From Bugula neritina (taxonomy: Eukaryota > Animalia > Bryozoa), in NCBI GenBank assembly GCA_964035545.1, contig OZ037770.1, positions 10,484,973 to 10,548,972 of the forward strand: a stretch of DNA of 64,000 nt. The letters run 5' to 3'. This document shows, in pieces, positions 8,088-62,000 of this stretch (positions are counted from its first letter, which is position 1; each line of letters begins with the position of its first letter). The translations under genes and the position numbers were made by a program. The notes below the pieces were generated by a model. That model made no database searches. It had not been told where the DNA came from and saw nothing but the letters and a program-made list of their open reading frames with translations.

Positions 8088-8145
<58 letters not shown>

Positions 8146-21511: not shown

Positions 21512-21587
<76 letters not shown>

Positions 21588-58094: not shown

Positions 58095-58144
<50 letters not shown>

Positions 58145-58206
58145 AATATGCTTTAGTAAAACTATAAGTTTCTACTATTGCGAAGGTGTGGGCCATGGTA
58201 CTCTGT

Positions 58207-58253
58207 TCTGTGCTGATGAGGGGACAAACCCCGAAACAGCTGCTGTCCACAGA
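58207..58253 (+). ncRNA. Type I hammerhead ribozyme, copy 1 (predicted cleavage after C58247)
   Basis: Stem I TCTGTG/CACAGA; CTGATGA; stem II GGGG-ACAAA-CCCC; GAAA; stem III CAGC-T-GCTG; GTC cleavage triplet. Confidence 0.9.
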
Positions 58254-58478
58254 TTGAGATATTACGCTCTCATTTAATGCTCAGCAATGACATTAAATGA
58301 TTGAGCACTCTCACCATGGTCACAAACTCAAGCTGCTAGCATTTTGCAATGCTCGTGACTCCTAGGTGACCCCTAGAGTCACTTGAGCACTCTGGCTTGA
58401 GTTTACACACCTTTTAAATATGCTTTAGTAAAACTATAAGTTTCTACTATTGCGAAGGTGTGGGCCATGGTACTCTGT

Positions 58479-58525
58479 TCTGTGCTGATGAGGGGACAAA
58501 CCCCGAAACAGCTGCTGTCCACAGA
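58479..58525 (+). ncRNA. Type I hammerhead ribozyme, copy 2 (predicted cleavage after C58519)
   Basis: Identical to copy 1, offset by 272 nt. Confidence 0.9.
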
Positions 58526-58527
58526 TT

Positions 58528-58585
<58 letters not shown>

Positions 58586-59075
58586 TATATATATAATTAT
58601 ATATATATAATTATATATATATATATATAATAACTTAAATTTAATAGCAAAAAGCTCATAAATTACAATTGTCTTTAAATACTACTATAAACAATTCAAA
58701 TTTAAATAATGTTTACACAATTTTATGTAATTATAGCCTCAAAACTTATTAATAATTAACAGTGTATATATGTGTTGCTAGCTTGCTATGCTTGTTTTAA
58801 AATGTTAAGTAATATCTGCTCGATTGATCTAAATAAAGACAGTTTGCTCTTTGAAACATCACGAGAGGTTAAGCTTTGATGGAAACAATTGTGAGTAAAT
58901 GGAGCTGCTTTCAAGTTAAAGAATAGCGTATTTGGAATCGAAGTTTACATAATTTCACATTGATTACCGTTACATTTTTCTTTTAAATAGAACATAATCT
59001 TATCATGCTGTTATGCTGAATTTATAGTCTGTATCTTATGGCAGGCTACATGTACCCAGTTAAACAAGTAGCATA

Positions 59076-62000
59076 ATGTGGCAGTCTATATTCGTTTTTG
59101 CTTCATCATCTGCTCTGTTTCTGCTCCTTACCTGCAATACAGACATAGCAGAGGTATGTTCCTACTTTTCGGTTCGATGCTATCAAGAATGCATTTTTTA
59201 ATATAGATCTTAGTTAGTAGGTAAAAATGATGCTATAAATTAGCTTATTTTGAGAAAAAAATGTTTTGCATCAACTGTTAACATATTATTTGAAACAACA
59301 AGTTAGCACAACTTGAATGCATGGATGTAATTGTAAACTTTCAATTATTTTAGCATTTTTAGGTTCATTAATAAATAAACAATGATCACCTAATGAAAGT
59401 TTGAATTTAGTGACCTATATTTTACTATATTAGTAATATTAATATAACATATATAGCATATATAATATAGCATATAGAACCATTTTAATTTATGTATACA
59501 TGCAGAGGTTACTATATCAATAAGTTGATTTATTATAATAATATTGTTTCTATTAAATTATTTGTTTATCCAACTGAACACTTAAAAGTTGAAGTATGCT
59601 TTTACCTTTACCCATGCAACAAAAACATAATATATGTTTTGTATTGAAAAAGCCAAAATGGTGACTATATAATAATCTATTACAACAAGTATAATTGAGC
59701 ATTTGTTTTTGTTGAGGTTCAAATCTTAATTGTTCATTTGCTACCCAAAAGTATGTATTTATTTCATTGTTATTTAATCAGAAATTAATAACATTAATTA
59801 GTTTTCAAAATTATTTATATATCCAACAATTAATTTTGCATTAATTTCATTTAAACTTGCATTAATTTGTTTTTCTCAATCTTTCCCCATTGCTCTTCCT
59901 TCTTTTTCATTTTACTTTAAAAAGCTTGTAAATTAAAATGTAGCGATTGCATAGAAATTTCTTTTTTACTTTTTTGTAGCTTAATTATCTAGATCTGCAA
60001 TTCATACAACTTTCTGCAAAATTGATTCAAACAATTTGATTAAAAAAAATTTCTTGTAACTACAATGTTTTCAAAACTTAAAATCTTTCAAAATTTTGAG
60101 GATATATAGTGATATGAAACTGTTTGTATTTTTATATAAAGCACTTATAAAATAATTTTAGAAATTTTGCCAAGTGAGTTGATTTTTTTATAAATAGAGA
60201 GTTGTTATATCAATTCTATTTGCCTATTGACACAGAATTTGTTGCTTAAATTTAGAGTAATGATCATTTTTAGCAAAAAGTCAATTATATAGAGCCAATT
60301 ATGACTTATTTTTTATTTTTTAAAAAAAAATTATGAAGATAACTTAACTTATTCCAATCAAAAAAAATGTAAACTGTTTATTCCCTTTATTGTATAAATG
60401 CATGCAACATCACAGAGAACACTGAAAAAAGGAAAAATAGCCTTAATTCCATACTGCTCTTTATTCTACTTGCATAATTATATCTCCATAATGAATAAAT
60501 TATGATCTTAAAGAGTTGAGTCCAAAGCCATTTAAAACATATTTTAGTGCTTTGAGTAGCAAAATTCACATTTGATATTTAAAGAAAAATTGGTAGAAAA
60601 ACATCAGCCTTATTATGCTATGCTTCTATATACTATAATTATATAGTGATAAATACAGTTCGGTCATCTTTTGTACCTAAACGATAAAATCCAATTGAAA
60701 GCGCTGTTGCTCACTTACTATATATAGCAGAAAATATCTGTTAACATATGGTGTAGCGCTATTCTATACATTTTAAGATGTTTATCGGGCTGATAGCTGT
60801 TCTTTTATTAGCAAACAAGTATTAGTTACAGAAACATATATAATAGCTGCTAGAAAATCTTGGTTTGAAGCAACAGGTTTTTTTTGCACGAAAACTTTTA
60901 CTTCAAACAGCTCCGTGTGCAAATTGAACTACAATTTCGCTGAACTAAGAAATCAACCAAGAATCATTATGTACAGATTTAGATATAAAATATGTTTTGA
61001 CTTTTGTTATAGGCAAATATTAGGTCTATGCTGGTGCAGAAACAACCTAATGGTAGCTGTGTGTCCCAAGTTGAAGAGAAAGTACGAAATGTTCCTAGTT
61101 TGGCAAAGTGTGTGTCGAAATGCTTGAGTTCGGCAAGATATTGCCAAAGTGTCACATATGATAGCACCATCACCACCTGTTCAATGTCAAGAGAGACAAC
61201 TCTAAAACAGTGCGAAGAAGTGGACGTTTCCCTTGTAACCTACACTAAAATACAAGATACGGAGCCAATGATCAGTGCAACAACCACAATCCCTACCGAA
61301 ACAACTACAACTCCTACTACAATGACTACAACAACTACAACTTCTACTACAATGACTACAACTCCTACTACAACGACTACAACTTCTACTACAACGACTA
61401 CAACTTCTACTACAACAACTACAACTCCTACAACAACAACTACAACTCCTACTACAACAACTACAACTCCAACCACAACAACTACAACTTCTACTACAAG
61501 CACAACTCCTACTACAACTACAACAACCACTGTTCCCACTACAACAACGACAGTGCCTACTACAATCACAACATCCACGCTTACCTGTAAGAATGAGCAT
61601 GATATATTACACATTAAAAATGCACATCTTCCAACTGCATGTACATGTTTTGCACTTGTCACACAGTCACTCAAGGCAGATTTAGAATAAAAAACTGCTT
61701 TGTTCCGCAGACCAAAGCTTGTTTGTCACTTACGATGTCATGTGTTGAGATCACATTGGGATTGTTGTATATAATGTTACTATATGTTTGTATGTGTTAT
61801 ATTATAATGTTATATCAACATTCTACATCATTTGATATTACTATATTAAACCACATGTTAAACCGATATTGTACTATATTAGATTATATTACGATACGAT
61901 ATCATGCGATGCTACTATGTTATATCATGTATTGTTGCTACATGATGTTATATTATTTCATATTACTGTAATATGTATATTACGTATATGGCGATACTAT

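What the first reader, a model, noticed from the sequence alone, without database searches (positions are those of the whole stretch)
58143..58534. Tandem hammerhead ribozymes bracket a 272-nt highly structured monomer: a retrozyme-like circular RNA template
Seen: two identical complete hammerhead cores (CUGAUGA / GGGG-ACAAA-CCCC / GAAA / GUC) lie 272 nt apart in 120-bp direct repeats. Stem I can extend past an internal loop (CUC-UGU-UCUGUG with CACAGA-UU-GAG). The monomer 58248-58519 is densely self-complementary (TCATTTAATG/CATTAAATGA, ACCATGGTC/GGCCATGGT, AAACTCAAGC/GCTTGAGTTT, GTGACTC/GAGTCAC, CACACCTT/AAGGTGTG) and has no ORF. Known: animal non-LTR retrozymes are tandem repeats of a few hundred nt with type I hammerheads that give circular RNAs, and Penelope-like elements carry similar minimal hammerheads. 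Inference: double self-cleavage releases a 272-nt RNA that circularises; the 1.44-mer is the expected product of rolling reverse transcription of such a circle.
Basis: partly seen in the sequence, partly recalled or inferred. Interest (0 to 1): 0.9.

Follow-up and report, generated by a model that had tools for sequence, protein, structure and literature searches.

The report
Hammerhead retrozyme copy in TA repeat
This is one young, 1.44-unit copy of a 271-272-base non-coding mobile element carrying a self-cutting hammerhead RNA motif (an animal "retrozyme", a known kind); its roughly 430 sister copies show it is copied from RNA into (TA)n repeats, as the Penelope-like retrotransposons of the same genome are.

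Summary
Positions 58143-58262 and 58415-58534 are 100% identical direct repeats 272 nt apart. Each holds a complete type I hammerhead (core 58213-58247 and 58485-58519). The 272-nt monomer has no ORF and folds far better than shuffles (z about -8.5).

It is not a singleton. The genome holds at least 429 insertions of this family at 97-100% identity. Nearly all lie in (TA)n and share one 3' end, 14 nt past the ribozyme cleavage site. Their 5' ends are variably truncated (19-541 nt in an unbiased sample, median 119). None of 48 arrays starts at the cleavage site.

The same genome carries several Penelope-like element (PLE) families with a telomerase-like RT, a GIY-YIG-like C-terminus and their own hammerheads. 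They also end in (TA)n. They share with the retrozyme a start site followed by a bulged hairpin (GCUC...UU-GAGCACUCU).

The copies are therefore not terminal repeats of a long Penelope element. They are a non-autonomous retrozyme, most likely copied by a PLE enzyme.

Self-cleavage and circular RNA remain untested, because only assembled contigs of RNA-labelled runs were available. Rfam does not reach threshold.

The kind is known. This scan has already found the family on other DNA of this genome.

The parts
58099..58149 (.). Upstream part of the (TA)n microsatellite that received the insertion. The last bases overlap the element's 5' end by TA microhomology.
   Evidence: TRF period 2, 25.5 copies. 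Nearly every sister array has (TA)n on both sides.
58143..58534 (+). The whole insertion, 1.44 units of the 272-nt retrozyme. It starts at unit phase 168 and ends at the family's fixed 3' end.
   Evidence: Start phase 168 recurs in 3 of 48 arrays.
58201..58258 (+). Hammerhead 1, type I. Stem I runs 58201-58212 with 58248-58258, the core CUGAUGA is 58213-58219, stem II is 58220-58232, GAAA is 58233-58236, and helix III is 58237-58246. C17 is 58247, so cleavage would fall after 58247.
   Evidence: Read from the sequence. Topology recovered by the relaxed Rfam scan. Stem counts.
58248..58519 (+). The 272-nt monomer between the two predicted cleavage sites. It is non-coding, 43.8% G+C and highly self-paired.
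58259..58262 (+). Internal AUAU. This is the point at which all sister DNA copies end, and the inferred site where the (TA)n target primes cDNA synthesis.
   Evidence: The 3' junction pattern is found 429 times and the internal-junction pattern 66 times, with controls at 0.
58266..58312 (+). Bulged hairpin 1. GCUC, an upper stem, a UU bulge and GAGC form the hairpin, followed by the tail ACUCU. It begins 3 nt downstream of the start site.
   Evidence: Fold of -17.6 kcal/mol. One compensatory pair (U-A to C-G) in subfamily 2. The same module occurs in the PLE families.
58351..58394 (+). Bulged hairpin 2, built to the same design (GCUC, stem, UU bulge, GAGC, then ACUCU).
   Evidence: Fold of -20.5 kcal/mol. 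No alternative 3' end was found in front of it.
58473..58530 (+). Hammerhead 2, identical to hammerhead 1. Cleavage would fall after 58519.
58531..58629 (.). Downstream part of the target (TA)n. The element's last bases, AUA(U), merge into it.
   Evidence: TRF period 2, 49.5 copies. 3' flanks.

Best explanation
The 392-bp stretch is one insertion of a young, non-autonomous retroelement of the animal non-LTR retrozyme kind. Shown here: the unit is 271-272 nt, non-coding and strongly self-paired, and carries a complete type I hammerhead. The genome holds at least 429 insertions. They sit in (TA)n, all end at the same base 14 nt past the ribozyme site, and are truncated at variable 5' positions. 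Resident PLEs end in (TA)n in the same way and share a start-site-plus-bulged-hairpin module with the retrozyme. Inferred: a PLE endonuclease nicks (TA)n, and the freed TA end pairs with the AUAU that lies 3 nt upstream of hairpin 1 in the retrozyme RNA. The PLE reverse transcriptase, probably guided by the hairpins, then copies the RNA back across the intact ribozyme site. It stops after a fraction of a unit up to about four units, and the cDNA end is joined to the upstream TA repeat by microhomology. Because this copy runs 1.44 units, it holds two complete hammerheads. If transcribed, it could release the 272-nt RNA, which a host ligase could circularise. That makes it one of roughly 10% of copies able to act as a source. 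The template for reverse transcription had an uncut or re-ligated ribozyme site, so it was either a circle (my preference, about even odds) or an unprocessed multimer.
For: Repeat and hammerhead anatomy.
Copy number and identity: at least 716 first-look candidates, with 72 scored at 90-100% (the whole-unit matches at 97-100%) on all large contigs.
Junction counts: 429 3' junctions into (TA)n against 66 internal unit junctions, with controls at 0.
Unbiased sample of 40 insertions: lengths 19-541 nt, median 119, and 3 of 40 long enough for two hammerheads.
Across 48 distinct arrays no 5' end lies at the cleavage site. Start phases pile up at TA-like sites: 12 (7 arrays), 268 (4) and 168 (3).
PLE partner: a 706-714-aa ORF reads FDIVEFYPSI and YRDDGL, then a CxC...CP..C linker, then IVYQ...YVGIS. 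Several intact copies exist, along with many 5'-truncated ones. The predicted fold (pLDDT 83) is closest to telomerase RTs. The C-terminus matches GIY-YIG only weakly, but a homologue scores above the cut-off. Pseudo-LTR tandems and head-to-head copies are present.
Six PLE hammerhead types among the 13 loci read end in (TA)n 49-135 nt after their own hammerhead.
Shared bulged hairpin: GCUC, a variable stem, a 2-nt bulge, GAGC(A/U)CU, placed next to the start site.
Literature: the non-LTR retrozyme definition and the PLE-mobilisation hypothesis (PMC7229834), (TA)n as a preferred PLE target (PMC8557442), and retrozymes as PLE derivatives (bioRxiv 10.64898/2026.07.22.740005).
Against: No curated Rfam hammerhead model reaches its threshold.
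No cleavage, RNA ends or circles could be observed. All runs were Logan contigs, most only guessed to be RNA. Some contigs run from the element's end into (TA)n, so genomic DNA or read-through transcripts are present.
Covariation within the family is weak, with 2 pairs showing double changes, because the copies are young.
Helix III is short (3 bp plus A15.1-U16.1, with a near-palindromic CAGC-U-GCUG). As in PLE and newt hammerheads, efficient cleavage may therefore need a dimer.
The monomer has no BLAST similarity to the PLE bodies. The partner assignment rests on the roughly 16-18 nt hairpin module, the shared target and the shared end anatomy.
No experiment links any PLE protein to this RNA.
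Confidence: 0.8

Rival explanations
1. The copies are solo terminal repeats (pseudo-LTRs) left by 5'-truncated insertions of a long autonomous Penelope-like element. On this reading it is not an independent element.
For: PLEs in this genome do carry hammerheads in tandem terminal repeats and insert 5'-truncated into (TA)n. A retrozyme copy lies beside a PLE in loci L037, L043 and L047.
Against: Arrays of 1-4 units contain nothing but the 271-nt unit. The monomer shows no BLAST similarity to the 16 PLE loci (L032-L047) apart from separate neighbouring insertions. The hammerhead stems differ from those of every PLE family seen. No PLE ORF matches anywhere in the window.
Confidence: 0.05
2. The element is a retrozyme, but the template for reverse transcription is a linear, unprocessed multimeric transcript of an existing array, primed at an internal AUAU. 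No circular RNA is involved.
For: The resident PLEs are themselves copied across their own hammerhead sites. Their 3' ends lie 49-135 nt past the site, so crossing an uncut site does not by itself require a circle. The longest arrays seen hold about four units. About 50 multi-unit source loci exist. Contigs with genomic (TA)n junctions in RNA-labelled runs fit read-through transcription.
Against: Published retrozymes of this kind accumulate mainly as circles (PMC7229834). No 5' end lies at a cleavage site or at a plausible transcript start. The pile-up at exactly 1.0 and 2.0 units (phase 12, 7 of 48 arrays) fits an RT returning to the same AUAU on a circle. Growing from one unit to several is simplest on a circle.
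Confidence: 0.3
3. It is an ordinary minisatellite or local duplication expanded by unequal crossing-over, with a hammerhead-like motif that has no function.
For: Rfam thresholds are not met. Core-only matches occur by chance in the window.
Against: The 429 dispersed insertions share one fixed 3' end, have graded 5' truncation and lie in (TA)n on all large contigs. All core nucleotides and all three helices are intact in most copies, and stem II varies only between G-C and G-U. Other hammerhead families of the genome keep the same core with quite different, still-pairing stems.
Confidence: 0.03

Closest known systems
Metazoan non-LTR retrozymes (Cervera and de la Pena 2020, PMC7229834)
   Same: Short tandem unit within the 150-450 bp range. 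Type I hammerhead in every unit. No ORF, G+C below 45%, and a highly self-paired monomer. Many dispersed copies. Co-resident PLEs with minimal hammerheads. The proposed mobilisation from a circular RNA by a PLE RT also matches.
   Different: Most copies are single, 5'-truncated partial units rather than long arrays. Insertion is strictly into (TA)n, with one fixed 3' end 14 nt past the cleavage site. Helix III is a near-palindrome like that of PLE hammerheads. RNA circles have not been shown for this family. The search terms I tried in the paper found no description of an insertion site or start signal.
Penelope-like elements with C-terminal GIY-YIG and a CxxC linker (Neptune-like; Craig et al. 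2021, PMC8557442)
   Same: Hammerhead near the 3' end, tandem and inverted arrangements, 5' truncation, and (TA)n as the preferred target. In this genome they share the start site plus bulged hairpin module.
   Different: The retrozyme encodes no protein, is 271 nt rather than 2.5-3 kb, and its hammerhead has different stems, with a stem I internal loop and a 5-nt loop II. Its start site is 14 nt past the ribozyme site rather than 49-135 nt.
Newt and salamander satellite 2 and Schistosoma SM-alpha hammerhead repeats
   Same: Type I hammerhead in a repeat of about 330 bp, transcribed and self-cleaved. The short helix III may need dimer formation.
   Different: Those form large satellite arrays or SINE-like families. 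Here there are hundreds of short, independent, microsatellite-targeted insertions.
SINE/LINE partnerships that share a 3' tail (stringent-type LINEs)
   Same: A non-coding parasite carries the 3' recognition structure of the autonomous element and is copied by target-primed reverse transcription with 5' truncation.
   Different: There is no pol III promoter or tRNA head. The template probably has no free 3' end (a circle). The recognition hairpins lie downstream of the start site and are not copied in most insertions.

Membership tests
Metazoan non-LTR retrozyme | Type I hammerhead with the conserved catalytic core and three helices in each unit | tested here: met
   CUGAUGA, G10.1-C11.1, GAAA, A15.1-U16.1 and C17 are all present. 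Stem I is 6+3 bp, stem II is 4 bp, and helix III is 3 bp plus A-U.
Metazoan non-LTR retrozyme | Head-to-tail repeats of about 150-450 bp, so that two ribozymes flank a monomer | tested here: met
   The period is 272 nt here and 271 nt in most copies, in arrays of up to about 4 units. Only about 7-15% of insertions hold two ribozymes.
Metazoan non-LTR retrozyme | Non-coding, low G+C, strongly self-paired monomer | tested here: met
   Longest ATG ORF is 22 codons and G+C is 43.8%. Fold z-scores are -8.25 linear and -8.7 circular, with 72% of bases paired.
Metazoan non-LTR retrozyme | Dispersed multi-copy family with the signs of retrotransposition | tested here: met
   At least 429 insertions with a fixed 3' end, graded 5' truncation and a (TA)n target.
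Metazoan non-LTR retrozyme | Expressed as linear and circular monomeric RNA | tested here: inconclusive
   The unit is present in contigs of one oligo-dT metatranscriptome and three runs guessed to be RNA, with unit-to-unit joints. Contigs cannot show ends, strand or circles, and genomic junctions are present too.
Metazoan non-LTR retrozyme | Self-cleavage at the predicted site | not testable with these tools
   This needs in vitro transcription of 58143-58534.
Metazoan non-LTR retrozyme | Co-existence with autonomous PLEs carrying hammerheads | tested here: met
   Six PLE hammerhead types were seen, with intact ORFs of about 700 aa, a telomerase-like RT fold and minimal hammerheads.
Rfam hammerhead families (clan CL00010; RAGATH-1-hammerhead RF03152) | Score at or above the curated gathering threshold | tested here: not met
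   No hit at gathering score. The best relaxed scores are 15.2 bits against a cut-off of 56.3 and 14.9 bits against 48.5. This lowers confidence in model membership but does not affect the hand-read core.
Penelope-like element (as pLTR remnant) | Sequence continuity with an RT/GIY-YIG ORF, or homology of the unit to a PLE terminal region | tested here: not met
   No PLE ORF in the window. No BLAST similarity of the monomer to the 16 PLE loci beyond adjacent insertions. Only the hairpin module of about 16-18 nt is shared.

The most novel reading that the evidence does not exclude
The family may give the first insertion-level picture of how animal retrozymes move. On this reading a (TA)n nick primes on an AUAU 3 nt upstream of a conserved bulged hairpin that the retrozyme shares with resident telomerase-like PLEs. 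The template has an intact ribozyme site, so it is a circle or a multimer, never the cleaved linear RNA. Retrozyme subfamilies may also follow different PLE partners. Subfamily 1 has GAGCACUCU in both hairpins, as PLE family B does. Subfamily 2 has GAGCUCUCU in both, as the PLE families of L088 and L089 do.
Probability: 0.4. Interest if true: 0.6.

Novelty: new member of a known kind. Interest (0 to 1): 0.35.

Why it matters
Non-LTR retrozymes and their suspected dependence on Penelope-like elements are already published, so this locus adds a member rather than a kind. Its value lies in the family it belongs to. Hundreds of young copies with one fixed 3' end, graded 5' truncation, a single microsatellite target and a hairpin shared with co-resident PLEs give concrete, testable parts for a mechanism that the literature states only as a hypothesis. 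Those parts are the start site, the recognition hairpin and the target. This copy has two intact ribozymes and would be a convenient template for cleavage and circularisation assays.

Tried and rejected
Rfam at gathering score over the whole window found nothing. Relaxed scans gave only sub-threshold hammerhead hits, plus AT-repeat artefacts such as Pestivirus UTR, Plasmodium snoRNA and mir-297, which I discard.

A genome search with Pfam GIY-YIG found one unrelated locus and missed the PLEs. I then found the PLEs through their hammerheads.

Pfam and PDB sequence searches of the PLE ORF gave nothing useful. Only the fold search identified the RT.

I tested for a second 3' end in front of hairpin 2 and got 0 hits, so I dropped the idea of two start sites in the retrozyme.

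The covariation count on 49 copies yielded only 2 pairs with double changes, and the structure was derived from one of the rows, so I do not use it as support for the whole fold.

Read laying gave contigs only, so it offers no evidence on cleavage ends, strand, level or circularity.

The organism's name was not established. The nearest PLE proteins come from a bivalve and a bryozoan, and the runs holding the element are marine, biofilm or symbiont samples. A full-text search for bryozoan plus hammerhead ribozyme found nothing relevant.

Full report
**1. The observation**

The window sequence and the repeat finder confirm two 120-nt direct repeats, 58143-58262 and 58415-58534. They are 100% identical and 272 nt apart, so the insert is 392 nt or 1.44 units.

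Each repeat holds a complete type I hammerhead:
- Stem I: CUC-UGU-UCUGUG (58201-58212) pairs with CACAGA-UU-GAG (58248-58258).
- Core: CUGAUGA at 58213-58219.
- Stem II: GGGG-ACAAA-CCCC.
- Then GAAA.
- Helix III: CAG-CUG-CUG, followed by U and C17 at 58247.

The second copy lies 272 nt further on.

The monomer 58248-58519 has no ORF; the longest from ATG in circular reading is 22 codons. It has 43.8% G+C. It folds at -104.3 kcal/mol against -66.5 for shuffles, z -8.25. As a circle it folds at -98.4 kcal/mol, z -8.7, with 72% of bases paired.

Rfam does not support the call at curated thresholds. There was no hit in the window. In a relaxed scan of 91 nt, RAGATH-1-hammerhead scored 15.2 bits (cut-off 56.3) with the right open-stem-I topology, and Hammerhead_3 scored 14.9 bits. 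The core pattern alone is not rare, since five stemless matches occur elsewhere in the window. The evidence that this is real comes from the helices and from the family.

**2. The family**

The 272-nt monomer has at least 716 first-look candidates in the 216-Mb assembly. Of these, 72 were scored at 90-100% identity, the whole-unit matches at 97-100%. They lie on all large contigs, in arrays of one to about four units. In the 30 loci fetched, nearly every array lies inside (TA)n. It ends with the same bases, GTC then CACAGATTGAGATA, running into (TA)n, and it begins at a variable phase of the unit.

Two pattern counts make this quantitative. The 3' junction (element end into TATAT) occurs 429 times. 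The internal unit-to-unit junction occurs 66 times. Reversed-pattern controls gave 0.

I then fetched the first 40 junction hits, chosen without regard to length. Insert lengths run from 19 to 541 nt with a median of 119. Only 3 of 40 are long enough to hold two ribozymes.

Across 48 distinct arrays no 5' end falls at the ribozyme cleavage site. Instead, starts pile up at TA-like sites: phase 12 (ATAT, giving exactly 1.0 or 2.0 units) in 7 arrays, phase 268 in 4, and phase 168 (the start used by the window's copy) in 3. BLAST boundaries next to (TA)n are ambiguous by a base or two, and that ambiguity is what microhomology looks like.

A fixed 3' end, graded 5' truncation and microhomology at the 5' joint are the marks of target-primed reverse transcription. 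These are inferred from what is known of non-LTR elements, not shown here.

**3. What the fixed 3' end implies**

Every DNA copy runs through the predicted cleavage site and stops 14 nt beyond it, just after the distal part of stem I. Two things follow:
- Any insertion longer than about 65 nt carries a complete terminal ribozyme.
- The RNA that was copied had an uncut or re-ligated site.

A linear, self-cleaved monomer would give copies ending at GUC and starting at CACAGA. None was seen. The template was therefore a circle or an unprocessed multimer.

I favour the circle for three reasons. Published retrozymes accumulate as circles (PMC7229834). The pile-up at integer unit lengths fits an enzyme returning to the same AUAU. 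Growth from one unit to several is simplest on a circle.

The PLEs of this genome are also copied across their own ribozyme sites, so the linear-multimer reading stays open.

**4. The likely driver**

A genome-wide hammerhead pattern gives 957 matches against 245 for the reversed control. Besides the retrozyme, it reveals several other hammerhead families. Around one of them (family B) lie ORFs of 706-714 aa. There are several intact copies at 92-97% identity to the query, and many copies truncated at the 5' side.

The evidence that this ORF is a PLE protein:
- Its sequence shows FDIVEFYPSI and YRDDGL, then a CNCR....CP..C linker, then IVYQ...YVGIS.
- Pfam and PDB sequence searches are blank or sub-threshold.
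- The C-terminal 177 aa match GIY-YIG at only 15 bits, while a 52%-identical homologue scores above the cut-off.
- The AlphaFold model (pLDDT 83.2) is closest to telomerase reverse transcriptases from Tribolium, Candida, Tetrahymena and human.

Together with pseudo-LTR tandems (L039) and head-to-head truncated copies (L032), this is a Penelope-like element of the C-terminal-endonuclease type with a CxxC linker.

Five further hammerhead types from twelve more PLE 3' ends, whose ORFs are about 45-55% identical to family B, were read. All have a minimal hammerhead, and all end in (TA)n 49-135 nt after it. (TA)n is a published preferred target of such PLEs (PMC8557442).

**5. The shared signal**

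The monomer has no BLAST similarity to the PLE bodies, so it is not a deletion derivative or a solo pLTR. It does share a small module.

In the retrozyme, the start site AUAU is followed after 3 nt by a hairpin. The hairpin consists of GCUC, a variable upper stem, a UU bulge and GAGC, and it is followed by the tail ACUCU (58266-58312). A second hairpin of the same design lies at 58351-58394.

PLE family B has UUUACGCUCU...UAGAGCACUCU 40 nt before its 3' end. It has UUUUACGCUCC...GAGCACUCU directly after its 3' end in the tandem junction. Families in L088, L089, L091 and L096 carry the same design with quite different upper stems. In L091, L094 and L096 the hairpin follows the shorter of two alternative 3' ends.

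I re-derived it here from different loci.

I infer that the hairpin is the mark by which the PLE enzyme chooses where to start, and that the retrozyme borrows it.

**6. Subfamilies**

An alignment of 49 distinct units shows three groups:
- A major 271-nt form, with stem II closed by G-U.
- A 272-nt form with about a dozen changes (subfamily 2).
- The window's form, which is intermediate, with stem II closed by G-C and an extra C in the GUAAAAC/GUUUCUAC hairpin.

Subfamily 2 has one compensatory pair in hairpin 1 (U-A to C-G). It also has A-to-U after GAGC in both hairpins at once. The PLE families of L088 and L089 also have U there, while family B has A. This hints at partner tracking, but it rests on few events.

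Overall covariation is weak, with 2 pairs showing double changes, as expected for young copies.

**7. RNA evidence**

Twenty public runs hold the unit, all as Logan contigs. Laid on one unit, four runs cover it completely and show unit-to-unit joints. These include an oligo-dT biofilm metatranscriptome (depth about 9-19) and an RNA-Seq-labelled symbiont metagenome (word depth up to 40,000).

They also contain contigs that pass from the element's end into (TA)n or into unique flanks. This shows presence in RNA-labelled libraries. It does not show transcription level, cleavage or circles.

**8. Context**

The insert lies in AT-rich DNA with no ORF of 90 aa or more between 50 kb and 61 kb. The window holds no PLE ORF and no other copy of the unit.

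**9. Verdict**

The reading as a retrozyme-like element is right. The alternative that it is only a Penelope terminal repeat is rejected. The kind is already described (PMC7229834; bioRxiv 10.64898/2026.07.22.740005), and the same family has been reported several times by this scan on other DNA of this genome. What remains open is the RNA biology (cleavage, circle) and the proposed start signal.

Noticed in passing
window 61028-61690 (+): An open frame of 220 aa with a PAN domain (Pfam 28.8 bits, above cut-off) followed by a long Thr/Pro-rich, mucin-like run. It is probably an exon of a secreted or surface protein, 2.5 kb downstream of the insert.
   Followed up: partly
alignment A1; e.g. L097:752-1295, L076:635-906, L043:3723-3990: Retrozyme subfamily 2 has GAGCUCUCU in both bulged hairpins, where the major subfamily has GAGCACUCU in both. 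PLE families differ at the same base: family B has A, and the L088 and L089 families have U. This may reflect parasites tracking their partners.
   Followed up: partly
L057, L077, L078, L081 (G000:C1:13288392, C2:17208769, C2:17241803, C2:20906487): Extreme 5'-truncated insertions of only 19-22 nt, made of the last 5-8 nt of the ribozyme plus the 14-nt tail, sitting inside (TA)n. They show that reverse transcription often aborts within the first two dozen bases.
   Followed up: partly
L091, L094, L096 (G000:C3:12297400-12298800, C2:27311100-27312500, C3:12881750-12883150): Some PLE copies run past the usual 3' end. They either continue into the next tandem copy (L091) or reach a second ATAT end 60-75 nt further on (L094, L096). 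In each case the bulged hairpin directly follows the usual, shorter end.
   Followed up: partly
L032:5539-8520 (G000:C1:29603538-29606519): Two 5'-truncated copies of PLE family B joined head to head, each ending in its hammerhead and (TA)n. This is the inverted arrangement described for PLEs.
   Followed up: partly
window 8088-8139 and 21529-21584: Two further (TA)n runs of 50 bp or more in the window carry no retrozyme or PLE insertion, so they are unoccupied potential targets.
   Followed up: no
window 58237-58246: The helix III segment CAGC-U-GCUG is a near-palindrome, like the CUA-N-UAG and CUAU-AUAG segments of the PLE hammerheads. Two ribozymes could pair into one long helix III, which suggests dimer-dependent cleavage.
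   Followed up: no
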